NCBI RefSeq assembly: GCF_964204865.1
Contig: NC_135263.1
Location: 4,712,001-4,776,000 of the forward strand
Direction of reading: 5' to 3'
Length of the DNA: 64,000 bases
Origin: Styela clava
Lineage: Eukaryota
The stretch's first letter is position 1. Each line of letters begins with the position of its first letter. The notes under the pieces were generated by a model. It had not been told where the DNA came from, made no database searches, and saw only the letters and a program-made list of their open reading frames with translations. Of this stretch, positions 3,578-56,267 are shown in pieces. The position numbers were made by a program, and so were the translations under genes.

Positions 3578-17611
<14,034 letters not shown>

Positions 17612-33284: not shown

Positions 33285-34889
33285 TCAGATATTTCTGAAA
33301 CTGTCTGGTTGCTGATCATCTTTAAAACTGTTATGAAAAGAAACCGTTTCATTTGCAGATTTATATTCAACTCTTTGTTCATCGCAACTCGCTGCTATAT
33401 CAGCTATAACCTTAGTGCCCAAGTTATCAAGTGCAAATGCCGTAGCTCCAAGATTCACTGCGGCCCCCATGGCTAGATTTGTGGCTTCCGCTGCATCTGG
33501 TCCATATTTATATTCCATATTCTTAACTGTTGCTGTGGTAACGGCTTGGGCAATAGTTGAGCCGGCTTTTTCCAGTTCTGTCCAGATTTTACCGAATCCT
33601 GCAAGCCCCGATTTCACCACTTTTATCGCACCGTACACATTAGTGCTCGTATTTTCTGGGCTATCTTCTATTGCCTTCGTGAAATATGGGGCAACTTGTT
33701 GACCAACTGAAGTTGTGACCGAACATAACCACTGAATCAACCAATTTTTTACCCGGACTGTGGTATCAGCTGCATTGTATGTATATTCAAGGCCTCTTTT
33801 GATATATGGATTGACCGTTACTTTCCCTTCTGCTGGGGTCAACTTTGCTTTAATATTGTTTGCACTGCTTTCAACTAAATTGGTAGCATAGTCTGTCCCA
33901 TTTCGGACATGTTGGGACAAAGCGGTCGCTCCATTTGTTACCGATGCTGCCATGCGGTCACTCATGCTTGGCGGAATGTAATCATCCGCTTCTGAAAATG
34001 CTCCTATAAATTCTGATAAATCAACAAATCCTTCGTCTGGATTTTCAATTTGAAAAGCAGCATAAGTTTGAAGAATATTCTCGAACATTTCCACATACTC
34101 TCTCGACACATTGCTCGAAATTACGACCCCTATTGCGTACCCTTCTTGAATTCCATCTTCTGTGCACTTGGGGAACATATAGGCACCGTTCGCAGATTTC
34201 AAAACCGGCATCTGGTTATTTGCGAGTGGATACACCCAGTCTCCGACTTGAAGTATAGCTTGAGGTCCTCCTGGTGTTACAGAATCTTCCTTCAATAATA
34301 CAATTTGTAAGGATGCTGGGTAAGACGGAGGCATTGATTCTACTTGGCTCTCTGCTGAGACAAAATATATTTGTGCGCCACTCTCTATAGATAAAAGTGG
34401 ATCGGCCATAATGTCACTATCGTGGAATTGGGGACCAGACTGAGATGAAAGTGGGTCGTGTAGAGAATATGAAGGCGGGCTTTCGGGCTGTGGAACATCG
34501 TGATTAACTGGTTCATCAAAAGATTGTAAATGATAAATTCTCTGTCTTATATTAGCTATGGTTGATATGATCTGTTCTTGCATCTGCCTGGCTTGTTCCC
34601 ATCCTGCACTGGATTGTTCAAAATCGTGGATATTGTGTCTCAAACCATTCTCACTATGTCTCAAAGCCTGAAGATAGAGTGCCATAGCGTCTGCGTTGTT
34701 GTTTGCATCATCTTGTGCCAAAGCCTGCGAAGCTAGAGACACTGATTTAGCATGGCATGATCTGATTTCGTTGAGTATTTCGTCAAAGGCTGGAGGTGCT
34801 GACGGTCGAATTACTTGCTGTGCCATGGCTTTATAGTTTGAAAAATATACTGTCACCCCGATATACCAAGTTACTGCCAAATTACCCAT
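33285..34889 (-). CDS. SPART: Spartin-like protein, paralog A (MIT domain + senescence domain), uninterrupted CDS
   Basis: 534-aa ORF; the start may be MAQQ at 34826. N-terminal MIT-like helices (ALAQDDANN...ALYLQAL...WEQARQMQEQ), PPSY motifs, 'LQVGDWVYPL...PVLKSANGAYMFP', senescence domain 'GLAGFGKIWTELEKAG...YKYGPDAAEAT'. Confidence 0.88.
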   Translation of the reverse strand: MGNLAVTWYIGVTVYFSNYKAMAQQVIRPSAPPAFDEILNEIRSCHAKSVSLASQALAQDDANNNADAMALYLQALRHSENGLRHNIHDFEQSSAGWEQARQMQEQIISTIANIRQRIYHLQSFDEPVNHDVPQPESPPSYSLHDPLSSQSGPQFHDSDIMADPLLSIESGAQIYFVSAESQVESMPPSYPASLQIVLLKEDSVTPGGPQAILQVGDWVYPLANNQMPVLKSANGAYMFPKCTEDGIQEGYAIGVVISSNVSREYVEMFENILQTYAAFQIENPDEGFVDLSEFIGAFSEADDYIPPSMSDRMAASVTNGATALSQHVRNGTDYATNLVESSANNIKAKLTPAEGKVTVNPYIKRGLEYTYNAADTTVRVKNWLIQWLCSVTTSVGQQVAPYFTKAIEDSPENTSTNVYGAIKVVKSGLAGFGKIWTELEKAGSTIAQAVTTATVKNMEYKYGPDAAEATNLAMGAAVNLGATAFALDNLGTKVIADIAASCDEQRVEYKSANETVSFHNSFKDDQQPDSFRNI

Positions 34890-35629
34890 TCATCGGGTTT
34901 TATTGCGCCTACTTCTGCCCGATATACGTGGCCTAAAGCCCGCTATATCATTTCCCGGTAATTCACCTGCATGTAAAATGAGTCTTAAAAAGGGGATTTC
35001 CCTTTGAATCTTGTGATCTCTGAAAATGACATCACCATTCGTCAAGCGTCACAGCTATGAGCCTATGATTCAGCTTTCAAAGCTTTGTTTAGGCTGCAAA
35101 CACCATCGAGATGTCATCCACAAAAAATCTGCATATCGATAAATAAATTAATGGACATAAACGAGGAAAAGTCAAGAATGAAAAGAGCAGACCAAACCAA
35201 TCAAGAACTTGAAATGAAAAATTGAAAATTTTTATCTGAATCATTTAAATTTTTAGACCAATATATCACATTTTTTTTTTATATCAAACTCATATGAATC
35301 TAACACAATTAGAAAACTTTAGTTGCTTGTTTTGATCATAAATCATGTACGGAGACCAGTTGACCTAGTTACAACCGCGAGATGTCAGACGTCAGCAATT
35401 TATTTTCTTCGTTCGAGTGTTGCCAGATTTTATGATCATTAATACATCAATATATATTTTTAAAACACATCTTGTACGAATAAAACAAAAAATGTTATTT
35501 CCAAGTGTGAAATTATTGTTAATAAAGGAATTTTGATTTAAAAAAAGTAATGCATGCGCTCTATTATCCACCGTATCTGCATTGATTTCAAATATTTGAG
35601 TGATTGTGGCAAAGGTTTATGTAGGTCGT

Positions 35630-35680
35630 AGAATGCAGTCGGTTTCAGTTCGGTCGGCGCCATTTTTTTTTCATAATTGA
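35630..35680 (+). promoter_or_regulatory. Likely core promoter with YY1-type motif between spartin A (-) and symplekin (+)
   Basis: 'ggcgccatttt' (YY1 consensus CGCCATNTT) at ~35656-35666 in a GC patch between head-to-head genes; a possible donor at ~35740 and an acceptor 'atttcag' at 36967 lie downstream. Confidence 0.4.
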
Positions 35681-37024
35681 GGCGTTTATAAAAATATCTG
35701 AATTTCAATTGCCTATTATTTATTTATCGTTATTTAAAGGTATTTATTATTTTATTTATTCTTCAAAAATTGATCAATCCACACCAAGGAACTATAAAAA
35801 AAAATTTTTACGGAAATTATGAATTAATGTGGAATATTTTTCCCTCAAAAGTCAGATAGTGTATCTAGAATTAGATTTATTGCTGGAAATGACTTGTGTG
35901 TTATAGAAACAGAATTAGTATCACATTTGTTCATGAATTGTCCATTTGTAAAACAATACCGTAGGCCTAGGTATATGATTACCGTATGCAGGTAGGCTAT
36001 GTTTCCTGATTATCGTGAAAATAACTGGCAGAAACAATTTAATTGATTATGAAACTTGTGTATTATTACATTTGAGTCCCCCTTATCATGCACATTTATT
36101 GAATGTAAAAAAAATGATATTATTTTGTTTAACGATAACGAACTCACTAACGCTAGCGATCTCTCACATATCGGGATCGTTACGCCGAGTAAAACAGCTT
36201 GCTCGATTTCGATTGATTGTCTGTGCGTCTTGGATGACAGTTAGTACTGTAGTATACCTCGGATGGCCTTATTACATTACTGTGGCATCGTAGTGCAGTA
36301 GTGAGTGATATTTTTTTGGCGGATTTTGCGGAATAAACACTGTAACTGCTTAAATAACGCCAAACAGTAGTACCATGCTCAATTATTATTTTTAAGATTA
36401 GTTATGCGAATAGTCAGCTGATAGTTTACATAGACTTCGGAAGTGAAATATATAACATATATTTTTGACATATTGTTTTGTTGAAATTTGTAGTTATGTA
36501 TGTATGGTTATTACAGTAGGGCACACTTTCCAAATTCCAAGAATGTCCCGTTGGTTCAATAAAATAAACACTTCTATGTGTCTCAGAAACGAGGGGCATC
36601 GTGCTCAACGGCAGATGCATCTTATTGGGCCATGCTTGTCTCGATAATAATCTACATTATTCCTGGCCGTCACATGATCTAAATTCCCATTATTTGCTAA
36701 AAACTCTAAAATGTCATGGTGAAAAAAAAATTTTCTTTTAGTAAATCGGATTATATTTTCCTGAGGAACTCAATGATGACGTTTTCTAGCTACTTCGTAG
36801 TTTTTTGTGCAGCTTCATTTTACTATATTTTCACCTATTATTAGAGGTGACAATGTCCAGACGTCCTTTCCCTTGTTTATGGGATTCTTTGGGACGAGAC
36901 AATGTCTCTCAATCTGTAAGGTGTGCTGTACTGTATAATGATACTAATCAAACCATTCACATTTCAGATCCGTTACCTAACATCCATATATTTGACCTAA
37001 TATTAATTTATTCCCATCACCAAT

Positions 37025-40000
37025 ATGGGGAAACCCAAAAAAACTGGTACAAAATCGCAAAGGTCATCAAATTCCAAAGACCAAGATGATGAGTCAGCAT
37101 CTTCTCATCAGTCAACATCAGAAAGAGTAATTGATCTGTTAAATCAGGCTTCTATGGCCTCAACGGACCCTGACAAAGTTAACAAACTCAAACAAGTTCA
37201 GGAATTAATTGTGAATAAAGAACCAGCATTACTGGATAGTTTTACTGATGAAGTTCTAGCATTCCAAGCTGATAGGTCGCATGACGTTAGAAAATTTGTT
37301 GTCGGATTCATGGAAGAGGCGTGCAAAAAAGATAATGAACTTCTCATGAAAGTAATGGCGAATTTAAATTTATTACTCGCTGATACCAATGCGAATGTCA
37401 CTAAAAAACTCATTCAGTCTATGACACAGTTATTTAGAATTGTGATCTATTGGTTAACAAAGGGTAGTTTCATCTCTGACAGTCATAAAGCTTGTTGGAA
37501 AGTGACATGCAATATTCGAGATCATATTTACGAATTACTGGATTCTGTCAATGACGGAGTCCGAACCCAAACTGTCAAATTCGTTGAAAAAGTGATCTTG
37601 ATTTTGTCAGAGATACAGCGAGGATCAGAGGTACCTAAGAAAACAGAACCTGCGTCTTCTATTGATGAGATTCCATTAAACCACGCATTACTAAAACGGG
37701 ATGAACTAAAAGCAGACGGAGAAAAAGCTCTTCAGAAATTGTTGGGTTTTATTGCTAATCCTGCTATATCGAGCGTTAATCTTATGGCAGCCATGGGAAC
37801 CTTATCAGCCATCGCAAAGCAAAGACCACAATTTATGGGAACGGTAGTACAAGCATTTGAAGCATTACATGCAAATTTACCACCAACACTGGCAAAAACT
37901 CAAGTCGCGAGCGTGAGAAAACATTTGAAAATGCAACTAATGAACATGTTACGGCTTTTTTCATCAACACAATATCATCCACAAATTACCAATCTACTTT
38001 ATGACTTGGGTACGACATCATCTGAGATAGCAAAAAATATGCCGAAATTGTCACAACGCCAAAGTGCCGGTAGCTCGCGAAAACGTAGCCCGGATGAAGA
38101 TAAAGGAGAGGGGAGTGGAAATAAAAAAATGAAAAAAGAGGTGAACGAATATGATGATGATGTTGAAATAGGACCTTCTACGAGCTCAGCACCTGCCCCT
38201 GTCCCATCAGAACCTGTGGTCAATCAACACAGTGTTGCTATTGATATCACAGCTAAACAGTTAGTCCCTTTATTATCACCAGAAAATGTCGCTAATTTAG
38301 TATTATTGAGCATGGTTATGTTGCCCGATAAAATGCCAGACGCGTTTCAAGCTTCATACACCCCTATTGAATCCGCGGGCACAGAGGATCAGATCAGTCA
38401 TTTAGCGAGATTACTTTCTATACAAATGACAGCCATGGGTGTCGGATCTGGAGTGCAAAAAGCTGCTGAAATGGCGGCGGAAGAAGACGCAAAAAAGAGA
38501 GAAAAGAAGTTAGAAGAAGAAGGAAAACAGAAATTACAAATTCAAACTGTTATAGGAGGAACAACAAAACCAACACCAGTTCAAGAAGACACTGCTCAAG
38601 ATAAATCGAAGAAAAATATCGAAGCAATGATATCATCTCAGACAGTCGTACCGAACCGTGGTTTGCCTCGCAGAATCCAGGGTTTTCGATTAGAAAGTAT
38701 CACTACCCCTCTCGATTTAGACACAAAAGATAAAATCATCAAAAATGCAGTTTTGAGAGTCTTGAGATCAGAACAAGCTGCTAACGCTGCTGGAGTTCAT
38801 GCCCAATGGTCAAAAATTTTAACCAGTCTTGTGGCACAGTTTGGTGGAGATCTTCATAGAGCTTTAGCAATGTTTATTTTAGAAGATATTAGGAATCGTT
38901 CTTCCCTTGCATTTGCATGGTTGTATGAAGAATTCAATATATATTTAGAAAACAGTCGTGGCTCGAATGACAAATCTGCACAAGAAAATTACGATGCCTG
39001 TCTGACAGGACTTTTACAAGGATTCAGAGAAAAACCAGAAACACGAGACAGTCTTTTCAATAAATTGGTAATGCAGGCACCTTTGTTAACTGATGGGGCG
39101 ATAAAACAAGTCCGTTTGTATTGCGAAGATGAAAAAAGATCACAATCGGGAATTAAACTTGTTAAGGACTTATTGCATTACAGAATAACGAGAAAAATGC
39201 AGTTTCTTCGTTTATTACTTGATCTTTGCGTCAGTAAAAATGAAAGTACCCAAACCGAAGCTGTTGAATGTATAAAATCAATTTTCCTACAAATTGAATT
39301 ACAGGATTTCATCCGAACATATGCTGTCACTCATCTTGAATATTTATCAAACTCCGCACCACCTTTGACCCTAGTCCCAGAGGGAACACCGGTAGATGCT
39401 AAATCAACATGGACGGAAACCCAAATGAAACAATGCATGACGTTATTTCTCGCTTTGCTACCGTTGGATCATAATTTAATCGAAACACTTGCCGAAGTTT
39501 ATGTAAAAACAAGCGCAGATGTGAAACGAGTTGTCTTACGAATCCTTGATAAACCTGTGAGCCAAATGGGAATGGAATCGCCACAATTATTGCGCCTCGT
39601 TGAAGGATGTCCAAAAGGTGCGGAGACTCTTGTTACTAGAATGTTGCATATACTTACAGACAAGACCCACCCAACTGTAGAACTGGTGCAGCGTGTCACA
39701 GACTTGTATGCAAAACGCGTCCCTGATGTACGTTTCCTTATACCAGTCTTGAACGGTCTCGAAAAGAATGAAGTTTTAAAAGCTCTTCCGAAGCTTGTTC
39801 GATTGAATCCTCCGGTGGTGAAAGGAGTATTTAATCGATTGCTTGGAGTCAATAGAGGACAACAATCCGAACCATCTGTGAGTTCTCTGTCACCTGTGGA
39901 GTTACTGATCGCACTTCATAATATGGATTCAAATACTGCTGATGTGAAAAGTGTAATAAAAGCTACAAGTTTATGTTTTGCTGAAAAAGCAGTTTACACA

Positions 40001-40879
40001 TCGGAAGTTTTGGTTACTGTTATCAACCACTTGGTGGAGCAAGCAGAAATTCCGACTCTGTTAATGAGAACGGTAATTCAGTCCTTGATCACTTATCCAC
40101 GTTTATCAGGTTTTGTTATGAATGTTCTTCAAAGATTAATTTTAAAAAAGGTTTGGGAACAAGAAAAAGTATGGGATGGATTCATAAGATGTTGTCAGCG
40201 TATGAAACCCCAGTCGTTTCAAGTGTTACTACAGCTTCCTTCCGTGCAATTATCTTCTGTTTTCGATTCCGCGCCGGAATTACGGGAACCTATGTTGCAA
40301 TACGTAGAACGCTTTACTCCGCAACAAAAACTTCACGTCAATAAAGACGTGCTGGCGTTGTTAGAACGGAAACCAACTCGAATTGAACTGGAAAAAGCTG
40401 TAACTTTGACTATTCAACAACAAACTGCGGAACTTGCTCTCACCGTTGCTGAACAGCAAGCCAGAGAAGAACAACAAAAGATGGCCGAAGAATATGATAG
40501 AATCCAGAAAGAAAAAGAACAGAGTGAAGCTAAAACAAAACTAATCGATGAACAGGTAAAAAAGGCGGCAAAAATGCTTCAAGAACAAGAGGAAAGAACG
40601 AAAGCACTCGAGCTGTTCCAAAAACGTGGATTCACCAACGTTAAAATGGAAACGAACGAAGAAAATGTTGCTCGAGGAGGATTTCCCACTGCAGCTCCGG
40701 GTCCGTCTCAAGTTGTTGCACCAGGGATTAGCTCGACACCAATGTCCAGTGAACAACAACAACCACAGCAAATGAAATTGACAATGTCTACTGATGCAGA
40801 AGTTCCACAGGGGAACAGAGATCGGCAGCGTAGCGGTACTCCTACGTTAGATGAAGCACCAGAGCCAACCATTACTTGA
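37025..40879 (+). CDS. SYMPK: Symplekin (CPSF / histone pre-mRNA cleavage complex scaffold), uninterrupted 1284-aa CDS
   Basis: Motifs '[29 protein letters not shown]', '[19 protein letters not shown]', '[19 protein letters not shown]', '[18 protein letters not shown]', '[14 protein letters not shown]', '[12 protein letters not shown]..YPRL', '[17 protein letters not shown]' are typical of symplekin. Confidence 0.97.
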   Translation: [1284 protein letters not shown]

Positions 40880-41874
40880 ACTCAATTTTATATTTACTAT
40901 AATTAGCTTTATTTTTGCTCTTTATGCTCAACCGCCAGATTTTGACTCGCCAGATATGAAATTTGTAAACATTACAGACACGTCAGACTCGCTTGTTTTA
41001 GGGGTATTCATGATAAAATTATTTAGGTGATATCATGGTCACTAGGTTTTTGTGGATTAATATTGTATTTTGACATTAAAGAATTTTGTTTTTGTCAACT
41101 ACCATCTGTTAGCTCCAGAACTTTGTATTCCAACTGATTTTCGAACCCAACGCTATGGATGCCGATTTAGGAAAGAAAAGTGTGCTTCTTTTCTGGAATA
41201 TTTACAGTTAAATTTAACAGTGTTTAATTTATAACAATTGAGAATGTCTGCTATTGAATATCAGCAAAACATTTCATTTTTTCAATTCTTTGTTTAACAT
41301 TTTTAATCGTGTGATTCAGCTATCCATGTTCATGGCTTATTTGTGTCTGTACCATGCTCTGCATAATCTGTTTTAATTAATCTTTCCTGCGTCTACAAAT
41401 GGTTCAAGAAATTATTTCAGTGACAAATTTCAATTCAAATCACATTGAATGAATGACATTTTCAACCATGATTCCAATTCTTACGATGTCCATATTTGAG
41501 AATTCTTATAACTTTTTCAATTTACGAATGTTCAAAATTTAAATCTTAATTTTTTAAATATTTATTCCAAAAAAACTACAGTATGTTTTGTTAGTAAAAT
41601 TATTACTGTATGCTTTATTAAGTTAAATTTCGACGATGTGATTTTGCTGCATAATACATCCATTTAGAATATCAATATGGCATACCAGTAATTCTGAAGT
41701 GTTGAACTTTATAGATAAGAATTTACAGATGCTTTACTTCACATACCCTTGTGTTTCATTTAACCAAAAGATTCCTTAATCTGACTTGCCAATTTTCTAA
41801 TGTTCCCTTTTCCCTTTTTTTTCAGACAGTGATATAATTATTACATATTAGATAGATTACAGTTTGGCCTAAAA

Positions 41875-44121
41875 ATGGCCGCCCCTCGTGCCATGAGAGA
41901 CAATGATACTGCTTTATGGCTTCATAATAAGCTGGGTTCCGCTGAGGAACTCTGGGTTTCGTCAAGTATTGGAGGAATTATAAAGACTGACACAATTGAC
42001 AATATATTCCGCTGTTTTTCTGTCTTATCGACAACAGTAAAAATGAAACTTTTATTGGGAATATTACATCTTCCTCGGAGAAGTCTAGAAGAGATGAAAC
42101 ATACTATTGATGGGCTAGTGGAACTCGCTTTAGACGACGGCGACCAGTGGGTAAAACTCGTTGCCAACGTGGTAAAAACTTACCCAATGAGGTGTAAGTT
42201 GAGTCTTGATTTAAGCTCAAATCAAATCGCGGAAAATGTCATTCACCAGTTGGAAGAAAAAGTTCGGGATTCTGATGTTTTTGCAACTTTGCCTTTAGAG
42301 TGTCAATACGTTAATAAAAATGCACTTCAAAATTTGGTCGGTAATCAACCCCCTCCGCAGAGACATTTTGCGCTTAAAAGAAAGCCGAAGTCCGCTGCAT
42401 TGAGAGTGGACTTGATGCAGAAGTCAACTAATGCGTCAAGTCAAGTTAAAAAGGGTGTATCGAACAAAATGGTTCCTGTAAAACATAGAGACATGACAAG
42501 AAAGCTTTCGGATGCAAGTCCTATGAGGGGAATACCAAAAACACCGGCTGGTGCACATCGAGCTGAAGGATTCAGGACGCAGTCGACTCCAGGCTCTCAC
42601 ATGACACCTGGTGGGGCTGGCAGAACAGCGTCGAGATTTTCATCAAGAGCAGAGCGAGGAACAAAATTGCTGGATATTTCTGAGCAACCTCTCGGAATTC
42701 GAGAACAGAAAAGACGAAAGAAGCAACAGCAGGAAGATGACAGTTCACAGCAGACTCAGCCTGAAGAAAAAATGGACGAAACACCGGAGTATGCCGCTGG
42801 TCTCGTCCCTCCAACAATGGCACAATCTACTGCACCCGAGGAAGAGCCATCGGTTCCAACAGATGCAAATGATGACACAGATGAGGCAGATGAAGATCAA
42901 CAAGAAGAAATGGAGGATGAAGATGAATACTCTGCTCATTATAGCCCTGCAGAATCACCAACCAACAAAATGCCGGTTAATTATAGTTCTATTGACCAAG
43001 AAGAAATGCCTGCCCCGCCTTCAGCCCCACCCCCTGAACCAACTAAGAAAAATCCGCCAATTGAAAAACGTCCTTCGATTGAAGATTATCCTGTATATGC
43101 AATGCCTGCAACACCTTCGCCGTATTTTAAACCGACGCCAACTCCAGCTCATATTATTACTTCTCCTTCACATTCTAAACCGGCTTTATCAAGTCCGAAC
43201 ACCCCATCTTCTCACACCTCATCATCTAGCACTTCATCTAGCAGTCCTTCCCCCGCTCGCAGAACGCAAGAGCAACCAACAAATATTCCGAGTCCAGTAA
43301 GGGTTATGCAAAGCCCACAAATCACACAGAATAAGCAAATCAGTCCTGTGCACTCTCAACCCCAGCAGACAAATTTATCACTTCCAAAAAACACTCAAAA
43401 CTTTCCTCAAGTACCAAGGTTCTATTCCCCACCTGTACAAAACCAGCCAAGATTACATACCCCTTCTCAGCCCCAGATTTCACAACAACAGCAGCAGCAA
43501 GTCTCAATACAACAACCAACAACGGTGCTACATGGTTACCCTGCAGGAATTTATCGTACTCAAGTACCGGTGCGACCTGGAATGCCTTATATTGTATCTC
43601 CTAATATGGTGCAACGTAGCGTACAAATCCCTGCACAAACTATAAGATTCGCTCCTTCCGCAAACGAAGGACAAATTCGAAGTTCAATTCCCGGCTTACA
43701 AACAGCTGTTTCGAGTAACCTACAACACCAGTTACAATTACAGCAGCATGCTCAACAGCAGGCTGCTGCAGCAGCAGCTCAGCAAGCTGCACAGCAAGCC
43801 CAACAACAGCAGCAACAGAAAAAGACTTTGACACTTACACATGAGCAGTGGTACCAAGCACAAGAAATGTTCCGAAACGCTAACAGACTAACTAGACAAG
43901 AGAAGTCGATTATATTAGGTTTTATGGCGGGGTCAAGGGACAACCCCAACCCAGATAAGGGTGATGTGGTGCAAATTACTCTCTCTGAGCATGAGCAAAC
44001 TGTACAGAACCCTGTTGGTGGAAGCTTGATTCCTGTTGTGGTTGAAACTTATTTTGAAATGAATTATAGGACTGGTACCACTGCTAAAAAACAAAGATTA
44101 AAACAAGTAGTGGCTCGGTAG
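41875..44121 (+). CDS. NELFA: Negative elongation factor A, full length, uninterrupted 748-aa CDS
   Basis: N-terminus 'MRDNDTALWLHNKLGS', 'LPLECQYVNKNAL', 'HFALKRKPKSAALR', 'KLLDISE'; C-terminus 'AQEMFRNANRLTRQEKSIILGFMAGSR...FEMNY'. Confidence 0.96.
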   Translation: MAAPRAMRDNDTALWLHNKLGSAEELWVSSSIGGIIKTDTIDNIFRCFSVLSTTVKMKLLLGILHLPRRSLEEMKHTIDGLVELALDDGDQWVKLVANVVKTYPMRCKLSLDLSSNQIAENVIHQLEEKVRDSDVFATLPLECQYVNKNALQNLVGNQPPPQRHFALKRKPKSAALRVDLMQKSTNASSQVKKGVSNKMVPVKHRDMTRKLSDASPMRGIPKTPAGAHRAEGFRTQSTPGSHMTPGGAGRTASRFSSRAERGTKLLDISEQPLGIREQKRRKKQQQEDDSSQQTQPEEKMDETPEYAAGLVPPTMAQSTAPEEEPSVPTDANDDTDEADEDQQEEMEDEDEYSAHYSPAESPTNKMPVNYSSIDQEEMPAPPSAPPPEPTKKNPPIEKRPSIEDYPVYAMPATPSPYFKPTPTPAHIITSPSHSKPALSSPNTPSSHTSSSSTSSSSPSPARRTQEQPTNIPSPVRVMQSPQITQNKQISPVHSQPQQTNLSLPKNTQNFPQVPRFYSPPVQNQPRLHTPSQPQISQQQQQQVSIQQPTTVLHGYPAGIYRTQVPVRPGMPYIVSPNMVQRSVQIPAQTIRFAPSANEGQIRSSIPGLQTAVSSNLQHQLQLQQHAQQQAAAAAAQQAAQQAQQQQQQKKTLTLTHEQWYQAQEMFRNANRLTRQEKSIILGFMAGSRDNPNPDKGDVVQITLSEHEQTVQNPVGGSLIPVVVETYFEMNYRTGTTAKKQRLKQVVAR

Positions 44122-47100
44122 TATTTTACATATAAAATAAAATTATTGCAATTCTTACAAAAGTGTTTAAATGTAGTTGTCTTCTTGTCATATCGTTGAA
44201 GCAAAGGTCTGTGTGAAAGTTTGATGACTTTTCTCTGCAGTTTCGAATTTGGAGAATAGATATTCTGATCAATGGAATAGCTCACTTAAAATTATAACAG
44301 AAAGAATAGTATTCAAAGATAAATCTGTATGGCTTTTCGAATAATTGTCAACGAGTTTTAAATTTATAGCATTGGAAAGCCTCATTAAGTCCTTTCAGCT
44401 AGCCCTGCTGGAATATACAGGAAATTTGAAAATACGACAAACATCATATCCCGACCACCCTGAGTTATTAGTTGTAATAATTTTGCCAGACTTTCACAAG
44501 CTAATTTTCTTACGGAAAAATCCCTGGGAGCGCATAAACATTGGCCATTGTGGCCTTTGATTTGTTTAGTACGAAACCTAATAACTATTGAATGAATAGT
44601 TATATATTTCACTGCCATTTCATGTTACTGTAACTTACGAAAGTCTGTCATTATTGGTGCAAAACAACGGTATGTAAAAGATTACCCAGGGCAGTGGGGT
44701 TCAACCTTTATTCTCTTGTCGATAGAAATCTTAGGCCCACAAACCTTTATTAAGATTTTCGAGTTTCGTAAAAATGTTAATATAAACAATACAGTAAAAG
44801 TGTCAATGACCAAACTAATCTTCTTGTTTATTTAATAATAGCTTGTCAAGTTGAACTTCCATCCTTGGTTCTCCAGCCATACATGTTTCTTCAGGCCTAC
44901 TGTAGGCCCAACAGAAACTCCAGACTCATTTTAAAAATCCTGACTGATTTAAAAAATCCTCAAGCCCACTTGGACCACCTTGAAAAAACACTGACTTAGG
45001 CATATAAAAGTGGAATATTGCGCCAATTTGAATCTTTATACTGAGTAAAGATTATTATAGACTTTGTTTCAATGAAACTTAAAAGCAATGTTATCTGCAG
45101 AAGATTCATTTCAAAATATCTGTGCTTTTTTGGTAAAATTAGCCATTTTTGCAGTTTATCTCTGACAGAAATACCAAATGGATAAAATGCTTGAGACACA
45201 ATTCATGATGTTATTATAATGATCTATGAATTTTATTGTGAATCATGATTTTTTCACCCAATCTCAAATGCCTGGACAAAATTTTTGGACATTTAAACAC
45301 ATCAACAACCCTTACTATTGTGCATTCTATGGGAAGTTTTTTATTTTATTTGATTTTGTTATTTCTTTATCATATTTCGATTCTGCCATACTTATTTTTT
45401 AGAATTTTTTTATATAAAAGTTCGGGATTCTGATGTTTTTGCAACTTTGCCTTTAGAGTGTCAATATGTTAATAAAAATGCGCTTCAAAATTTGGTCGGA
45501 AACAACCGCCACCGCAGAGACATTTTGCGCTTAAAAGAAAGCCAAAGTCCGCTGCATTGAGAGTGGACTTGATGCAGAAATCAACTAACGCGTCAAGTCA
45601 AGTTAAAAAGGGTGTATCGAACAAAATGGTTCCTGTAAAACATAGAGACATGACAAGAAAGCTTTCGGATGCAAGTCCTATGAGGGGAATACCAAAAACA
45701 CCGGCTGGTGCACATCGAGCTGAAGGATTCAGGACGCAGTCGACTCCAGGCTCTCACATGACACCTGGTGGGGCTAGCAGAACAGCGTCGAGATTTTCAT
45801 CAAGAGCAGAGCGAGGAACAAAATTGCTGGATATTTCTGAGCAACCTCTCGGAATTCGAGAACAGAAAAGACGAAAGAAGCAACAGCAGGAAGATGACAG
45901 TTCACAGCAGACTCAGCTTGAAGAAAAAATGGATGAAACACCGGAGTATGCTGCTGGTCTCGTCCCTCCGACAATGGCACAGTCTACTGCACCCGAGGAA
46001 GAGCCCCCGGTTCCAACAGATACAAATGATGACACAGATGAGGCAGATGAAGATCAACAAGAAGAAATGGAGGATGAAGATGAATACTCTGCTCATTATA
46101 GCCCTGCAGAATCACCAACCAACAAAATGCCGGTTAATTATAGTTCTATTGACCAAGAAGAAATGCCTGCCCCGCCTTCAGCCCCACTCCCTGAACCGAC
46201 TAAGAAAAATCCGCCGATTGAAAAACGTCCTTCGATTGAAGATTATCCTGTATATGCAATGCCTGCAACACCTTCGCCGTATTTTAAACCGACGCAAACT
46301 CCAGCTCATATTATTACTTCTCCTTCACATTCTAAACCAGCTTTATCAAGTCCGAACACCCCATCTTCTCACACCTCATCATCTAGCACTTCATCTAGCA
46401 GTCCTTCCCCCGCTCGCAGAACGCAAGAGCAACCAACAAATATTCAGAGTCCAGTAAGGGTTATGCAAAGCCCACAAATCACACAGAATAAGCAAATCAG
46501 TCCTGTGCACTCTCAACCCCAGCAGACAAATTTATCAGTTCCAAAAAACACTCAAAACTTTCCTCAAGTACCAAGGTTCTATTCCCCACCTGTACAAAAC
46601 CAGCCAAGATTACAGACCCCTTCTCAGCCCCAGATTTCACAACAACAGCAGCAGCAAGTCTCAATACAACAACCAACAACGGTGCTACATGGTTACCCTG
46701 CAGGAATTTATCGTACTCAAGTACCGGTGCGACCTGGAAAGCCTTATATTGTATCTCCTAATATGGTGCAACGTAGCGTACAAATCCCTGCGCAAACTAT
46801 AAGATTCGCTCCTTCCGCAAACGCCATTCTCCAAGGACAAATTCGAAGTTCAGTTCCCGGCTTACAAACAGCTGTTTCGAGTAACCTACAACACCAGTTA
46901 CAATTACAGCAGCATGCTCAACAGCAGGCTGCAGCAGCAGCAGCTCAGCAAGCTGCACAGCAAGCCCAACAGCAGCAGCAACAGAAAAAGACTTTGACAC
47001 TTACAGGTGAGCAGATGTACCAAGCACAAGAAATGTTCCGAAACGCTAACAGACTAACTAGACAAGAGAAGTCCATTATATTGGGTTTTATGGCGGGGTC

Positions 47101-48609
47101 AAGGGAAAACCCCAACCCAGATAAGGGTGATGTGGTGCAAATTACTCTCTCTGAGCATGAGCAAACTGTACAGAACCCTGTTGGTGGAAGCTTGATTCCT
47201 GTTGTGGTTGAAACTTATTTTGAAATGAATTATAGGACTGGTACCACTGCTAAAAAACAAAGATTAAAACAAGTGGTGGCCCGGTAGTATTTTACATATA
47301 AAATAAAATTATTGCAATTCTTACAAAAGTGTTTAAATGTAGTTGTCTTCTTGTCATATCGTTGAAACAAGGGTCTGTGTGAAAGTTTGATGGCTTTTTT
47401 CTGCAGTTTCGAATTTGGAGAATAGATATTCTGATCACTGAAGACCTCACCCAAAATAGTAACAGGAAGAATAGTATTCATAGATAAATCCGTATGGCTT
47501 TTCGAATGAATGCCACCGACTTTTAAATTTATAGCATTGGGAAGCCCCATTAAGTCCTTTCAGCTGGCCCTGCTGGAATATACAGGAAATTTGAAAATAC
47601 GACGAAAATCATGTCCCGACCACCCTGAGTTATTAGTTGTGATAATTTTGCCAGACATTCACAAGCTAATTTTCTTACGGAAAAATCCCTGGGAGCGCAT
47701 AAATATTGGCCAATGTGGCTTTTGATTTGTTTAGTACGAAACCTAATAACTTTGTCTCATGTTTTTGTTGGATTAATAACTATTGAATGAATAGTTATAT
47801 ATTTCACTGCCATTTCATGTTACTGTAACTTACGAAAGTCTGTCATTATTGCTGCAAATTATGTGAAAGATTACTCAGGGCAGTGGTGTTCAACCTTTAT
47901 TTTCTTGTCGATAGAAATCTTAGGCCCACAAACCTTATTAAGATTTTCGAGTTTCGTAAAAATGTTAATATAAACAATACAGTAAAAGTGTCAATGACCA
48001 AACTAATCTTCTTGTTTATTTAATAATAGCTTGTCAAGTTGAACTTCCATCCTTGGTTCTCCAGCCATACATGTTTCTTCAGGCCTACTGTAGGCCCAAC
48101 AGAAACTCCAGACTCATTTTAAAAATCCTGACTGATTTAAAAAATCCTCAAGCCCACTTGGACCACCTTGAAAAAACACTGACTTAGGCATATAAAAGTG
48201 GAATATTGCGCCAATTTGAATCTTTATACTGAGTAAAGATTATTATAGACTTTGTTTCAATGAAACTTAAAAGCAATGTTATCTGCAGAAGATTCATTTC
48301 AAAATATCTGTGCTTTTTTGGTAAAATTAGCCATTTTTGCAGTTTATCTCTGTGACAGAAATACCAAATGGATAAAATGCTTGAGACACAATTCATGATG
48401 TTATTATAATGATCTATGAATTTTATTGTGAATCATGATTTTTTCACCCAATCTCAAATGCCTGGACAAAATTTTTGGACATTTAAACACATCAACAACC
48501 CTTACTATTGTGCATTCTATGGGAAGTTTTTTATTTTATTTCATTTTGTTATTTCTTTATCATATTTTGATTCTGCCATACTTATCTTTTAGAATTTTTT
48601 TATATATAA
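42258..48609 (+). repeat. ~3.2 kb tandem segmental duplication (units ~42258-45415 and ~45416-48609)
   Basis: Both units carry the NELFA 3' CDS, 3' UTR and the spacer up to ~28 nt before the YAE1 ATG. Junction 'agaatttttttatataa|aagttcgggattc' has AA microhomology. Confidence 0.95.
45416..47287 (+). pseudogene. NELFA: 5'-truncated NELF-A duplicate; open from ATG 45572 (= Met181 of the full-length copy) to the stop, 571 aa
   Basis: Starts abruptly at about codon 129 of copy 1, has a 1-nt deletion near 45500, then is open to the stop. The track's start at 45557 is TTG. Pseudogene versus expressed short isoform is unresolved. Confidence 0.75.
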
Positions 48610-48636
48610 CCTTTATAATTACCGGTACAAAGCATC

Positions 48637-49281
48637 ATGAACAGTGATGACGATGAGATGGACCAAGGTTCGGAATTAGAATTAATGTCGCAAGAATGGA
48701 ATAAAATTTGTCAAAATCGATTTAAAGAAGGTTTCGTTGACGGGACCACAGTCGGACAGAAGCAGTCATTACAAGAAGCGTTTAACGCCGGTTTTCATCA
48801 AGGATTTTTGTCAAATTTTCTTCTGTCAAAAATTAGAGGAATTTTGAGTGCGTTGTTAGCGTATCAAGTTTCATATGAGGGGCATCCAATAACTGACGCT
48901 ACGTTACTAGAAACACACTCTCTCTTGGAAGAAATTGAATCTTTAGAAACAAATGCGGTAGCAGAAGAGTTTTTAAAAATGTCTTTGCATCAAAATAGCC
49001 AATCACAGTCTGTCCCTGATGAAATCATCCAATCGTTTTCCGCTTCAACGAGTTTACACCCATCAAACAATTCTGCTCAAACTTCAAACAAAATTGGCAA
49101 TGAACCAGAACAGGCGTCAGAAATTCAAGATATTGATTTAGAAGGGGCGAAAAATTTAACTATAAAACAAGTGAATGCAATAATTCTTCAGTGCCCTCCC
49201 ATCATGAAAAGTGTTAATCGTTGTAAAAATATTTTAAAAAGTTTGAATTGGACTGATGCAATGATTGATAGTTTGTTATAA
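48637..49281 (+). CDS. YAE1: YAE1 homolog (ABCE1 maturation factor), uninterrupted 214-aa CDS
   Basis: 'QEWNKICQNRFKEGFVDGTTVGQKQSLQEAFNAGFHQGF...IRGILSALL' is the Yae1_N G-x3 repeat motif and fits YAE1 better than LTO1. Confidence 0.85.
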   Translation: MNSDDDEMDQGSELELMSQEWNKICQNRFKEGFVDGTTVGQKQSLQEAFNAGFHQGFLSNFLLSKIRGILSALLAYQVSYEGHPITDATLLETHSLLEEIESLETNAVAEEFLKMSLHQNSQSQSVPDEIIQSFSASTSLHPSNNSAQTSNKIGNEPEQASEIQDIDLEGAKNLTIKQVNAIILQCPPIMKSVNRCKNILKSLNWTDAMIDSLL

Positions 49282-49389
49282 GGAACACATTTATTCTGTA
49301 TATTCTAGCACTGTCTGATCACTTTGATCTCCCAGTATTATACTGTACTAAGCATGACATGAAGCCTATATTATGAAAAAGGCCTAGTG

Positions 49390-49946
49390 CAGTACTTCCC
49401 AACCTTTGCAATTCTTGAAGTATTGTATTATCATTTCTTTGTGCGACCCACAATGAGATGTTGATATATATGATAAAAGGAACAATGTATCCCCATGCAA
49501 TTTACTATTAATGCGAAACTTGAGCTTGCATATTGTATATTATCAGATCAAGTCAAGGCTTGATTGGAGACGAGCTCACACGCAACGCAGCTTTAACACT
49601 CAGCAAATTGTGCTTTTGGCTCAAAGCAATACCATGCCTCAAATGAAAGCACATTTGATGTAATCAGACAAGCTTTCCTTTTACTTTGTTAGGGTGTCAA
49701 ACAAAGTTAGGGTATTAAAATAACGCATATTTACTGTCCACACAAATTCAACAAATTACTGATCTGCCTAGTCGCCTACCTGCCGTTTCCAAACTGAAAA
49801 TATTAACGAGATGCAATGCATAATTATAATTGTTTCGTAATAATAATGCCACAATTTCCCGATGTAATAGAAAACTGTATGTAACATTTGGAAATACCTG
49901 CGGCTCATTTTGATTGGCTTTGCGACCCACTGGTTGGGAAGCACTG
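49390..49946. mobile_element. hAT MITE
   Basis: TIRs cagtacttcccaacc / ggttgggaagcactg; degenerate TSD gcctagtg / gtctagcg. Confidence 0.75.
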
Positions 49947-51827
49947 GTCTAGCGGTGAAACTTTACTGTGCAGGTATCACAAATTTCATTTACGTCCCTG
50001 GTTCAAATCCCTTGACACCACCTCCTCTGAATATTGATTGTGTATTCAAATTTAGCTTGCTACTAATCAGTTTGTCTTTTTGGCAGTTTTTAAATTGTTT
50101 TTGAGCATTGTGCATAGGCTCTTCATTCGCACTAGTATATAAACGTTTTATGACTGTATATCTTACCAGCACTTGTTGAGCAATTTTCTTTATTATCACA
50201 TTTTACAAAATCATAATATAAATACTCATGGAAGCACCATATTATTATTTGAAATCAGTGTCTTGATGTGACATTCGAGCCTAACAGTGCTTGCTCATTA
50301 GAGATAAATAACGTGATCCAAAAGGGATTTATCCAGATTGATATCCTCGTAAACTAGGTATAGAGAAAATGTGTTAGTCAGACCCAGGGCTTAGAAAATT
50401 CATACTCAACTTCAAGCCATATCAAAAGTGACTCCTGATTGAGAAAATTGAGGTAGATTTGGACTCAAGCTCCCAACTATACAAACTTTTGCGTATGCGA
50501 GCTCAGCTGAGTCGGGGGCCTTTTCAGTTTTCTATTATCACCATAACGAATTTTCCACACATACCCAATTCACCACACCTCTGTTTCGGCACAATTTTTT
50601 CTTGTTCAAAATTAGTGATAAATGTATATAAATTCCCTGAGCATGACGTCACATGATCTCTATTTATGATAAACTTTGTTTGCAAAAATCTGATCAACAA
50701 CCTGTAAATACCCGTTCTATTGAGCACAGTAACAATTCAATTTTTCGTCTTTTTTGTATTCAAGATGTTCAGTTCAGCAATAAACAAAGTGCAATTTTGA
50801 AGAAATTATGAGAAACAATAAATTGATAAAGACAGTACAAAGTAGCTTTCAAAGTTAGTGTGTTTTATAGGGTCAGTATATATTTATTCATATCCGTTCA
50901 ACACCCATTGACATTCAGTATGTTGCCTATGCAGCTGACAAGGGACTCTGTTTGAGGAAAAATTGACCAGTTGACCACCATTCCATGCCCTTGGTAATTG
51001 CTTTATATAGCTGTTCATCATACTGGGACACAATCAGGGAACCCTGCTCTAGAACTATTTCAATGTGGTTCAAGTTCATATGGAAATATGTCCAAATTAT
51101 TGACATATGTCTTGTTAGTTAGTGATGAGTCAAGCAGCAGCTTTATTGTTGGAAAACCCAACGAAATGCACCGGCGCTCAATTGTTGAATATGCAATATT
51201 TGACCAATATAATAATGTAATGTAAAGAAGAAACTGTTTATAAAGTAACATTTGTGTATATAAGTACTGTTTCTATATTAAAAGGGAACAAATATTAGTA
51301 CAAATTACAAATATATTAGTGTAAATATATTTATTCTTTTGGGTAGACCTGAAAACCATGGAATAAATACGAAAATTTTTGCGAATCAGTGCTCTGCTCA
51401 CTAAGCAGATTCCATATCCAATTTTGCAACAAGCAAAAAAAAATCATAAGATTGTTGAAATCAGCCATATGGCACACTATTACCCAAAGAGCTTATATCA
51501 ATCTTGGAGAGATTAATTATTTTTGCCCATCTAGCCATTAGGCTTTGTCATAGAATTCCTTTGCTCGCATCACTGGATCACAATCCCCAAATTGGCCTTA
51601 AATCTTACAACCAAATGTATTTACTCCGGCACCATTAAGTCAGTAACTTCTCAGAAATGAGAGTGTATTTTGAGTGATTTTGTTCAGTCTTGCTTTTAGC
51701 AAATTCAGTTGAAAATGCCTGAAACTATGGTAACTATATATGGCTACAACTGGGCATATAGCTAATCAGATATGGTAGGAACTTTATGATTAGAGACAGA
51801 TAATAATTTACTACTAGCAAATTTCTG

Positions 51828-53354
51828 TCAATGTTTATTAGGCTTATCATTTAACATGTTTGATTTTGTACATTTTGAATTATCTTCTTTTGCTTCTGCT
51901 GAATATTCTTTTAAAACAGCTTTTCCTGTGTCTTTTGCAGCTCTTTTTGCAATCGCTTTTAGTCCAAGATTATCGAGATTGAATGCGGTTTTGCCGACGT
52001 TAACAACTGATCCCATTGCATGGCTTGTAGCAGTACCAGCCTCCTGTCCATATTTCAGCTGGACGTTCTCTACTGTGGCAGATGAAACTGATCGTGCAAT
52101 AGCTAAACCGGATTTTTCCAGTTCTGCCCAGACTGTACCGAATCCAGCCAGTCCAGCACCAGCAACTTTGATCACGCCATCCATTTTAGATTCTCCTTTT
52201 TGGTCTTTTGATGTTACCGAATCTGGTAAAACTTTTTTACTATAATCCTTAACATGTGGGGCAATTTCTTGACTTACTTTGCTTGTTATAGCACATAGAC
52301 CATCGACCAAAAACCTACTGACTTTAACAGTTGCTCTTGATGCTTCATGGGTGTAATATAACCCCTTTTTAACAGTTGGGTTTACTGTAGAAGGCTCATC
52401 ATTTGGTGTTATACTTTCTTTCAATTTATTTGACCCCTTTTTTATCAGATCTGTTGTAATTTCTGCTCCCTTATTGAGGCCGTAGCTCAACCATTCAGCA
52501 CCCGTTTGTATACCACCAACAATTTTATCACTTATAGACGATTCCTCCGTAACATGTACAGAATCGGACAAGTTCAAAACATCTTCTCCTTCAGCGATTT
52601 CTTGTGAACGAAACAGTGCCAAATTCTGCAGGATATTCTCGAATGTTTCTACCAACCCTGGATCTATTTCACTAGATATTACTATGCCAATGGAACCAGG
52701 CGATATGCCACCAGATGTGCGATTCGGAAACACATAAGCACCATTTGACATTTTTAAGGCCGGTGTCTCACCGCTTACAAGAGGGTAAATCCAATCCGAA
52801 ACTTGCACAAATGCTTGTCCAGTGCTTTCTAGGACATGGACTTTCAAGAACGTAGGATAAGAGGGTGGGGTCGTCCCTACTTCTTGATCCGCAGATACGA
52901 AAAATATCTGGACACCGCTTGGGATGGCAAGTAGTTCCAAAGCACCAGACATGTCATACATTTCCTCCGCTGCGACAGATAATGATTTATGACCTTCTGG
53001 TAATGCTGAAGAATAAGTAGGAACATCCGGTGAGTTGTTATAACTATGAGCATCTGCATTAGATTCCTGAATATCATAAAGTCTTTGCTTTGTTTTTACT
53101 TGTGCTTTAAGCATATTTTCTTGTTGGCGTTTTGCAACTTCCCATTCGGCTCCAACATATTCTGGCCCAGTAATATCCACCCTTACTCCATCTTCTAAAA
53201 ATTTCAAAGCCTTCATATAAATTTCAACAGCAAGGTTTGTATTTCCATTTTCATCAGCTTCCAGAGCATTCCCAACGAACGTCATAGAGTTTTGATAACA
53301 TGCATTGATTTCACTTAACTTATTGTAATCTGCACTTTTACCACCAGTTGCCAT
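51828..53354 (-). CDS. SPART: Spartin-like protein, paralog B (MIT + senescence domain), uninterrupted 508-aa CDS
   Basis: 'ALEADENGNTNLAVEIYMKALKFLEDGV...EWEVAKRQQENM' (MIT), 'AFVQVSDWIYPL', 'GAEWLSYGLNKGAEIT', 'GFGTVWAELEKSG...KYGQEAG...FNLDNLGLKAIAKRAAKDTG'. Confidence 0.92.
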   Translation of the reverse strand: MATGGKSADYNKLSEINACYQNSMTFVGNALEADENGNTNLAVEIYMKALKFLEDGVRVDITGPEYVGAEWEVAKRQQENMLKAQVKTKQRLYDIQESNADAHSYNNSPDVPTYSSALPEGHKSLSVAAEEMYDMSGALELLAIPSGVQIFFVSADQEVGTTPPSYPTFLKVHVLESTGQAFVQVSDWIYPLVSGETPALKMSNGAYVFPNRTSGGISPGSIGIVISSEIDPGLVETFENILQNLALFRSQEIAEGEDVLNLSDSVHVTEESSISDKIVGGIQTGAEWLSYGLNKGAEITTDLIKKGSNKLKESITPNDEPSTVNPTVKKGLYYTHEASRATVKVSRFLVDGLCAITSKVSQEIAPHVKDYSKKVLPDSVTSKDQKGESKMDGVIKVAGAGLAGFGTVWAELEKSGLAIARSVSSATVENVQLKYGQEAGTATSHAMGSVVNVGKTAFNLDNLGLKAIAKRAAKDTGKAVLKEYSAEAKEDNSKCTKSNMLNDKPNKH

Positions 53355-55941: not shown

Positions 55942-55978
55942 TTTACTTGGAACACATTGTTTTCAATTATTGATTATA

Positions 55979-56199
55979 TGGTAATCCTGAAGTATGTGAA
56001 CGAAGATGGCAGACACCGAACTTAGTATGTCTACCAGGTTAGGTTTAGGCAAAATTTTCAGGTACAAATACTAAGGGAGTCGCTTGTCTAGTCCCCGAAC
56101 TAAAATAAGGAAAATTGGAATAAATTATGGCCTAAACCTAACCTGGTAAACATACCAGGTTCAGGTGTCCATCTTGGTTCACATCCTTAGGGAGTACCA
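55979..56199. mobile_element. MITE family B copy between the two Harbinger stop codons
   Basis: Long imperfect TIRs, colinear with 30361-30597. Confidence 0.8.
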
Positions 56200-56267
56200 A
56201 ATATACTAGCATATCAGATTTGTAATACCTCTGCAGTTCAGTAATCATCTATAAAATTGTTAAAAGA

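What the first reader, a model, noticed from the sequence alone, without database searches (positions are those of the whole stretch)
33285..53354. 20-kb block of housekeeping genes with no CDS introns next to intron-rich genes; candidate SYMPK-NELFA-YAE1 operon
Seen: spartin A, symplekin (3.85 kb), NELF-A, YAE1 and spartin B have no intron in the CDS, while the adjacent RRS1 and PPP1R16 are heavily split. TE density is low in 37-49 kb. The three + strand genes are about 1-1.3 kb apart and each has a pyrimidine-rich splice acceptor 45-60 nt before its ATG (36967, 41825, 48592). Known: vertebrate SYMPK, NELFA and SPART are multi-exon, and tunicates resolve operons by SL trans-splicing. Inference: region-wide intron loss, for example a polycistronic cDNA recombining back into the locus, with the acceptors being SL sites or surviving 5'-UTR introns.
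Basis: partly seen in the sequence, partly recalled or inferred. Interest (0 to 1): 0.75.

Follow-up and report, generated by a model that had tools for sequence, protein, structure and literature searches.

The report
Intronless sea-squirt gene cluster, part operon
Five neighbouring housekeeping genes of the sea squirt Styela clava have no introns, and two of them (symplekin and NELF-A) look like one of the leader-spliced two-gene units already known from the sea squirt Ciona, so this is a good example of a known pattern, not a new one.

Summary
Spartin A, symplekin, NELF-A, YAE1 and spartin B are each one uninterrupted ORF with the expected Pfam domains. None has another copy elsewhere in the genome. 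The block is repeat-poor, and the neighbouring RRS1 and an ankyrin-repeat gene are split into small exons. The organism is Styela clava: the symplekin ORF is identical to a database entry of that species.

Public RNA-like contigs add two points.
- One NELF-A contig starts exactly at the predicted acceptor (AG 41824-41825). It carries 9 extra letters that, with that AG, equal the last 11 letters of the exon of a tandemly repeated spliced-leader gene on another chromosome.
- One RNA contig runs unbroken from the symplekin coding region through the whole 945-base spacer to 41818, 7 bases before NELF-A's first exon base.

That is the "no intercistronic DNA" layout published for Ciona operons, where single-exon genes are also over-represented.

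YAE1's membership is untested. A recent 3.2-kb tandem duplication, which made a truncated second NELF-A, lies between NELF-A and YAE1. Symplekin is split into many exons in another ascidian, so its intron loss is derived. A one-step loss through a polycistronic cDNA is untested and cannot explain the opposite-strand spartins. The scan holds many similar operon candidates elsewhere in this genome.

The parts
33285..34889 (-). Spartin A, single-exon CDS (534 aa as listed; the real start may be the ATG near 34826, MAQQV...)
   Evidence: ORF; Senescence domain 1e-28; only paralog is spartin B
36966..36967 (+). Candidate acceptor AG 58 nt before the SYMPK ATG; use not shown. It could be a leader site, or the end of a 52-nt 5'-UTR intron (GT at 36916)
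   Evidence: Sequence; scan; the RNA contigs start only at 36992 or later
37025..40879 (+). Symplekin, single-exon CDS, 1284 aa
   Evidence: identical to a Styela clava symplekin-like entry; single copy in the genome; RNA contigs colinear
40880..41818 (+). Spacer covered by RNA, read as a long SYMPK 3' UTR that ends beside the NELF-A acceptor
   Evidence: X2 contig of 3057 nt spans 38741-41818; X1 and X6 contigs reach 41744 and 41687; the only poly(A) signal is ATTAAA at 41075; no repeats
41824..41825 (+). Spliced-leader trans-splice acceptor of NELF-A (shown)
   Evidence: X2 contig starts here with 9 loose letters that, with the AG, equal the last 11 nt of the leader-gene exon
41875..44121 (+). 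NELF-A, single-exon CDS, 748 aa
   Evidence: identical to a Styela clava entry; the only other copy is the tandem partial one
42258..45415 (+). Tandem duplication, unit 1 (NELF-A codon 128 onward plus the downstream spacer, up to 13 nt past a YAE1-type acceptor at 45401-45402)
   Evidence: the junction is read in DNA run X10 as a loose end at 42258 that equals 45386-45415
45416..48605 (+). Tandem duplication, unit 2; holds a 5'-truncated NELF-A (1-nt deletion at 45499, ORF 45572-47287, 571 aa)
   Evidence: identity 97.9% in the CDS part and 96.9% in the 3' part; its marker deletion is seen in DNA run X10 but in 0 of 3 RNA-like runs (table 4, place 42345)
48591..48592 (+). Candidate acceptor AG 45 nt before the YAE1 ATG; use not tested
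48637..49281 (+). YAE1, single-exon CDS, 214 aa
51828..53354 (-). Spartin B, single-exon CDS, 508 aa, convergent with YAE1

Best explanation
This is a repeat-poor cluster of five single-exon housekeeping genes in Styela clava. Symplekin and NELF-A form a Ciona-type, leader-resolved two-gene unit. Transcription starts in the 2.1-kb divergent spacer shared with spartin A. Symplekin mRNA carries a 3' UTR of about 940 nt that ends within a few bases of NELF-A's unpaired acceptor. NELF-A mRNA is made by joining the spliced leader at AG 41824-41825. Shown: the leader junction, and RNA cover up to 41818. Inferred: that one primary transcript carries both genes. YAE1 may be a further downstream cistron, but a recent 3.2-kb tandem duplication now lies in between. 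The spartins are separate units on the other strand. The lack of introns is derived, at least for symplekin. It fits the published excess of single-exon genes in ascidian operons and most likely arose by reverse-transcript-mediated intron loss, gene by gene or in several steps.
For: Leader: the motif built from the loose letters occurs 164 times in the genome against 25 for the reversed control, mostly in an array with 1634-bp spacing on C8. The array unit reads ...GTTGTATTAAG followed by GTAAGT, downstream of a TATA-like box. The NELF-A contig of run X2 begins at 41824 with those 9 letters before it. No second NELF-A locus exists that could be a DNA retrocopy. Abutment: an X2 contig covers 38741-41818 without a break. 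In the spacer, X1 depth is about 9-14 against 18-21 in the SYMPK CDS and 9-15 in NELF-A. RNA depth is about 0 upstream of SYMPK (36700-36900), where DNA run X10 has 33. There is no AATAAA or ATTAAA within 40 nt of 41818, as in 16 of 18 Ciona operons (PMC1488885, passages). In Ciona, operon genes abut directly, and 38% of operon genes are single-exon against 15% of other genes (PMC2760879, section 10). Derived intron loss: metagenome contigs closest to Phallusia symplekin carry it as at least 9 separate exon matches.
Against: No RNA contig among those listed bridges 41818-41826, so no polycistronic precursor was seen (44 pieces were not shown). The leader junction rests on one contig of one run. 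Contigs cannot show a poly(A) site, a strand or single molecules, and the runs are only guessed to be RNA. X1 and X6 cover stops 80-140 nt before the acceptor. An earlier follow-up in this scan judged a similar seven-gene cluster in this genome to be probably separately transcribed (s1-825796). For YAE1: AATAAA lies 15 nt after the NELF-A stop, and the duplicate's marker is absent from the RNA contigs.
Confidence: 0.6

Rival explanations
1. These are independent genes. Each of the three + strand genes has its own promoter. NELF-A is a monocistronic gene that happens to be leader-spliced, as about half of Ciona genes are. The spacer RNA is a long symplekin 3' UTR that overlaps NELF-A's promoter and outron.
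For: No bridging contig was seen. In trans-splicing animals most trans-spliced genes are monocistronic (PMC1488885 introduction). An earlier follow-up on a like cluster favoured separate genes. ATTAAA at 41075 could end part of the symplekin mRNAs early.
Against: Stable RNA reaches 41818, so polymerase that makes symplekin mRNA must cross NELF-A's acceptor. Spacer depth is as high as NELF-A's own, too high for an outron.
Confidence: 0.3
2. One-step loss: a spliced but unresolved polycistronic cDNA recombined back into the locus and erased all introns of SYMPK, NELF-A and YAE1 at once.
For: All three + strand genes are intronless and the spacers are kept. Symplekin lost at least 8 introns relative to another ascidian. 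Recombination of spliced mRNA copies into the same locus is a discussed route of intron loss in tunicates (PMC4122922, passage).
Against: It cannot cover the two spartins on the other strand, which are both intronless and only 38% identical. Single-exon genes are common in Ciona operons in general. Nothing here dates the three losses.
Confidence: 0.1
3. Retrogene cluster: the genes are processed retrocopies that landed here and replaced their parents.
For: The CDSs are intronless and no parent copy is left in the genome.
Against: No leader remnant lies at any 5' end (0 matches in the window at up to 3 mismatches). An intact acceptor sits where a copy of a mature mRNA would carry the leader. 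No A-rich tract lies downstream of SYMPK, NELF-A, YAE1 or spartin A; the one tract 1.07 kb past spartin B is at the background rate.
Confidence: 0.07

Closest known systems
Ciona intestinalis leader-resolved operons without intercistronic DNA (Satou et al. 2006, PMC1488885; Satou et al. 2008, PMC2760879)
   Same: Same-strand neighbours. The downstream gene is joined to the organism's single leader. The upstream RNA reaches the acceptor. No AATAAA lies close to that end. The genes are single-exon, including the first one. The functions are housekeeping.
   Different: A different ascidian order (Stolidobranchia). The leader sequence is this species' own. The upstream 3' UTR is long, about 940 nt. 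No poly(A)-adjacent cDNA or dicistronic cDNA was seen here, whereas Ciona operons 41 and 43 have both.
Caenorhabditis SL1-type operons with little or no intercistronic sequence (as cited in PMC1488885)
   Same: The downstream acceptor abuts the upstream 3' end, and the ordinary leader is used.
   Different: Those operons have a canonical AATAAA upstream (per PMC1488885). The phylum is different and the origin independent.
mRNA-mediated intron loss (recombination with a reverse transcript), as discussed for tunicates in PMC4122922
   Same: All introns of a gene are gone while it remains the only copy at a locus with intact flanks.
   Different: The mechanism is inferred only. No reverse-transcript footprint can be shown.

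Membership tests
Ciona-type SL-resolved operon | Neighbouring genes on the same strand | tested here: met
   SYMPK, NELF-A, the truncated NELF-A and YAE1 all lie on the + strand
Ciona-type SL-resolved operon | The downstream gene's mRNA carries the spliced leader at an unpaired acceptor | tested here: met
   Met for NELF-A: one contig of run X2 has 9 letters plus AG equal to the leader exon's end. YAE1 was not tested.
Ciona-type SL-resolved operon | [quoted passage not shown] | tested here: inconclusive
   RNA contig cover reaches 41818, 7 nt before exon base 41826, but a contig end is not a mapped poly(A) site. For NELF-A to YAE1 this was not tested.
Ciona-type SL-resolved operon | An unresolved polycistronic transcript exists | tested here: inconclusive
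   No listed RNA contig bridges 41818-41826 in X1, X2 or X6. Contigs drop rare forms and 44 pieces were not shown.
Ciona-type SL-resolved operon | No canonical poly(A) signal within 40 nt of the upstream 3' end (16 of 18 Ciona cases) | tested here: met
   The only signal in 40880-41825 is ATTAAA at 41075
Processed retrogene | A leader or 5'-UTR copy at the 5' end, a poly(A) relic at the 3' end, and a parent gene elsewhere | tested here: not met
   No leader-like sequence in the window; no A-rich relics; no other copies
Symplekin / NELF-A / YAE1 / spartin protein families | Pfam domains above the gathering score over the expected parts of the protein | tested here: met
   The closest named relatives are ascidian symplekin and NELF-A.

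The most novel reading that the evidence does not exclude
The unit is a growing operon caught in the act. Its introns were erased together through a spliced polycistronic cDNA. Then an internal tandem duplication placed a NELF-A lacking its N-terminal domain 13 nt behind a copy of YAE1's leader acceptor, creating a new cistron. In addition, symplekin is itself the scaffold of the cleavage/polyadenylation machinery, so the choice between ending its own mRNA at 41818 and trans-splicing NELF-A a few bases later could act as a feedback switch between a 3'-end factor and a pausing factor.
Probability: 0.12. Interest if true: 0.65.

Novelty: new member of a known kind. Interest (0 to 1): 0.36.

Why it matters
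Satou et al. 2008 state that the reason for the excess of single-exon genes in ascidian operons, especially as first genes, is not clear. This locus offers a compact case in a second ascidian order. It has a first gene that lost all of its introns (at least 8 of them relative to another ascidian), a mapped leader junction, and an upstream RNA that runs into the acceptor. It also holds a recent internal duplication that can show whether a new cistron behind a copied acceptor gets expressed. In my two searches of the held library I found no operon or spliced-leader study of Styela clava.

Tried and rejected
- **Linkage in relatives by contig length.** I looked for relatives in which symplekin, NELF-A and YAE1 share a contig by matching the contig lengths listed in the protein searches. 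Symplekin relatives lie on Logan contigs of 6337 and 9262 nt, NELF-A relatives on 4224, 2448 and 3152 nt, and YAE1 relatives on 1189, 1873 and 62469 nt. None match, so there is no evidence of linkage from this route.
- **Metagenome scan.** It gave only symplekin pieces. Neither spartin, NELF-A nor YAE1 is on those four contigs, so synteny in another ascidian stays unknown.
- **Rfam.** It found nothing in the window or in the leader-gene unit.
- **RRS1.** The family search at the default threshold found nothing; it needed E up to 10.
- **Gene name.** PPP1R16 could not be verified.
- **Genome-wide sample.** I could not take a random genome-wide sample of long ORFs, so the background comes only from 200 kb near the window.
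- **SYMPK 5' end.** It was not resolved. The X1 contig starts at 36992, and the pieces laid at 36741-36926 carry unlike sequence on both sides, which points to a repeat.
- **Paper supplements.** They were closed and I did not ask for them. The operon lists in the supplements of PMC1488885 and PMC2760879 might say whether Ciona symplekin and NELF-A are operon partners.
Full report
**What is in the sequence.**
The window holds six long ORFs between 33.2 and 53.4 kb:
- spartin A, 33285-34889 (-), 534 aa
- symplekin (SYMPK), 37025-40879 (+), 1284 aa
- NELF-A, 41875-44121 (+), 748 aa
- a 5'-truncated second NELF-A, ORF 45557/45572-47287 (+)
- YAE1, 48637-49281 (+), 214 aa
- spartin B, 51828-53354 (-), 508 aa

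Pfam confirms the names: Senescence domain in both spartins, SYMPK_PTA1_N plus Symplekin_C, NELF-A_N and Yae1_N. The truncated NELF-A copy has no Pfam hit. The symplekin and NELF-A ORFs are 100% identical to database entries named symplekin-like and negative elongation factor A-like of Styela clava. This verifies the species that earlier notes of this scan had named.

A search of the whole assembly finds no second locus for symplekin, NELF-A (apart from the tandem partial copy) or YAE1. Only the two spartins match each other, at 38-41% identity. These ORFs are therefore the organism's only copies, not extra retrocopies.

**Surroundings.**
- **RRS1.** The four genome-wide candidate pieces of the RRS1 family all lie in this window. 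They are in order on the + strand at 22188-22265, 26220-26270, 27645-27737 and 28234-28320 (each is weak, E 0.001 to 0.4, and the default threshold gave none). RRS1 is therefore split over several kb.
- **Ankyrin gene.** On the - strand a gene with small ankyrin exons (9426-9590 clear, 13788-13952 weak) and an N-terminal exon at 16817-17185 is also split. Its identity as PPP1R16 rests only on a weak likeness to the MYPT1 N-terminus (E 0.24).
- **Repeats.** BLAST of the window against 234 kb of the same genome marks at most 3% of any 2-kb bin from 34 to 54 kb, and up to 35% in the flanks.
- **Long ORFs nearby.** In 200 kb sampled within 200 kb on either side of the window, only 5 ATG-ORFs of at least 200 aa occur. 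Three are transposon proteins (Pao, TNP-like, hAT) and two have no family. The 20-kb block holds 6. The block is thus a real local cluster.

**A feature this finding's text does not mention.**
The stretch 42258-45415 is repeated head to tail at 45416-48605. Identity is 97.9% in the coding part and 96.9% in the 3' part. The unit runs from NELF-A codon 128 to 13 nt past a copy of YAE1's acceptor.

The junction is read in DNA run X10: its loose end at 42258 equals 45386-45415. X10 depth also roughly doubles over the duplicated part, so the duplication is not an assembly artefact. X10 may, however, be the very sample that was assembled.

The distance from the full NELF-A stop to the YAE1 ATG is therefore 4515 nt, not about 1.3 kb. 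The copy has a 1-nt deletion at 45499 and an open frame of 571 aa from 45572. Between the two copies pN/pS is 0.26, from 17 synonymous and 15 non-synonymous codon differences.

**RNA evidence.**
One run search gave 9 RNA-like runs from three studies and 4 larger, DNA-like ones. All are Logan contigs, and "RNA" is the tool's guess. I laid X1, X2 and X6 (one from each RNA-like study) and X10 (DNA-like) on 36700-42700.

The RNA-like runs behave as RNA. Depth upstream of symplekin (36700-36900) is 0, 0.12 and 3.3, against 33 in X10. No joint was reported, so symplekin, its downstream spacer and the first 826 nt of the NELF-A coding region are colinear with the genome.

Two results matter most.
1. 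An X2 contig of 971 nt begins at 41824 with 9 further letters that lie on nothing in the stretch.
2. An X2 contig of 3057 nt covers 38741-41818 in one piece. That runs from inside the symplekin coding region through the whole spacer, stopping 7 nt before NELF-A's first exon base (41826).

X1 and X6 contigs cover the spacer to 41744 and 41687. Their depth there is about half that of the symplekin CDS and about equal to that of NELF-A.

**The leader.**
I built a 13-letter motif from the nine loose letters, the AG and a GT donor. It occurs 164 times in the genome against 25 for the reversed control. Most copies lie in a - strand array on C8 (4.13-4.55 Mb) with 1634-bp spacing. Three units read in L011 are identical around the site. 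Each has a TATA-like box, about 30 nt, an exon ending ...GTTGTATTAAG, then GTAAGT and a stem-like stretch.

The same exon end also heads several dispersed repeats (L001-L010), which agrees with earlier scan notes on leader-linked retrotransposons. The NELF-A contig therefore carries the last 11 letters of the spliced-leader exon, joined exactly at the predicted acceptor. A chance match of 9 letters is about 4e-6. No DNA copy of NELF-A elsewhere could explain it. NELF-A is leader trans-spliced.

**Comparison with what is known.**
- **Abutting genes.** In Ciona intestinalis, operons were defined as same-strand pairs less than 100 bp apart, and full-length ESTs showed that the genes abut directly (PMC2760879, section 10 read in full).
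- **Upstream ends.** The upstream poly(A) site lies at the acceptor or 2-6 nt before it, and 16 of 18 operons lack AATAAA within 40 nt (PMC1488885, passages).
- **This locus.** The only signal in the spacer is ATTAAA at 41075, and the RNA cover ends 7 nt before the exon. The symplekin/NELF-A pair fits that layout.
- **Single-exon genes.** The same Ciona paper reports 38% single-exon genes in operons against 15% outside, and 60% among first genes, and calls the reason unclear.

The pairing of intronless genes with an operon is therefore published. This locus is a new example in another ascidian order. Two searches of the held library found no paper on spliced leaders or operons in Styela: "spliced leader" with "Styela" gave 0 papers, and "Styela clava" with "operon" gave 20, none of the 10 listed being relevant by title.

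**What is not shown.**
- No listed RNA contig bridges 41818-41826, so a two-gene precursor was not seen. Contigs cannot show poly(A) sites, strands or single molecules.
- The symplekin acceptor at 36966-36967 is unconfirmed. The X1 contig starts at 36992. A 52-nt intron (GT at 36916, branch-like TACTAAT at 36943) or a TATA-like start are equally open.
- Against a simple link to YAE1: AATAAA lies 15 nt after the NELF-A stop.
- Also against it: the 1-nt deletion that marks the second copy is seen in DNA run X10 (6.55 of 10.4 depth) but in 0 of the three RNA-like runs (table 4).
- Also against it: the duplication junction appears as a loose end only in X10.
- Weakly for a longer NELF-A 3' UTR: the X1 contig that starts at 42373 is 1896 nt long. 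If colinear, it would end about 147 nt past the stop. This is an inference, because that part lies outside the laid stretch.

**Is the lack of introns derived?**
A scan of JGI metagenome contigs with an alignment of six ascidian symplekins gave four contigs. L034 and L035 match Phallusia symplekin best (87% and 64% over the aligned parts, against 67% and 56% for Styela). They carry the gene as separate matches:
- two on L034
- nine on L035 (1185-1301, 1505-1606, 1922-2047, 2394-2585, 2948-3145, 8386-8532, 8685-8939, 11013-11339, 11653-11826), spread over 10.6 kb

L032 also breaks after the "FMEEA" motif. So in at least one other ascidian symplekin is richly split, and the Styela state is a loss.

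None of the other four genes lies on these contigs. The contigs of the closer Logan relatives could not be fetched. Timing and synteny of the losses therefore remain open.

A retrocopy origin is unlikely. No leader remnant lies in the window. An intact acceptor sits where a copied mRNA would carry the leader. No A-rich relics lie behind four of the five genes.

A single polycistronic-cDNA event is not excluded for the three + strand genes. It cannot explain the two spartins on the opposite strand, which are both intronless and old paralogs.

Using the Ciona frequencies as a rough guide (my arithmetic): about 19% of genes are single-exon overall, so about 3e-4 for any five in a row. A few such runs would be expected per genome by chance alone, and more with operon clustering. 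The scan's notes list many similar candidates elsewhere in this genome (unchecked leads).

**Verdict.**
The YAE1 link and the one-step mechanism are untested. This is a new member of a known kind, of moderate interest.

Noticed in passing
window 45416-48605 (ORF 45572-47287): The truncated NELF-A copy lacks the NELF-A_N domain and sits 13 nt behind a copy of YAE1's acceptor. pN/pS against the full gene is 0.26 (17 synonymous, 15 non-synonymous differences). Its marker 1-nt deletion and the junction are seen in DNA run X10 but in none of the three RNA-like runs, so there is no sign of expression so far.
   Followed up: partly
G000 C8:4.13-4.55 Mb (L011) and L001-L010: A spliced-leader RNA gene array has a 1634-bp unit. 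The same leader exon end also heads several dispersed repeats of at least three kinds. This fits leader-linked retrotransposons or retrocopies of trans-spliced RNAs. Rfam has no family matching the unit.
   Followed up: partly
window 36741-36926: RNA and DNA contigs match short pieces here with unlike sequence on both sides. That suggests a repeat family right upstream of symplekin, in its likely promoter region.
   Followed up: no
window 36916-36967: A possible 52-nt 5'-UTR intron of symplekin: GTAAGG donor, TACTAAT branch-like site 19 nt before the AG. A TATAAT lies at 36934. Neither reading could be tested.
   Followed up: no
L032-L035 (JGI metagenome contigs): Ascidian host DNA, closest to Phallusia and Ciona symplekin, is present in two or three JGI metagenome samples. 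It could serve for further gene-structure comparisons.
   Followed up: partly
window 54664-58868: Harbinger-type transposase ORF pieces lie on the - strand next to spartin B, as another note of this scan says. One arm of a repeat at 55967-56204 resembles 30349-30603.
   Followed up: no
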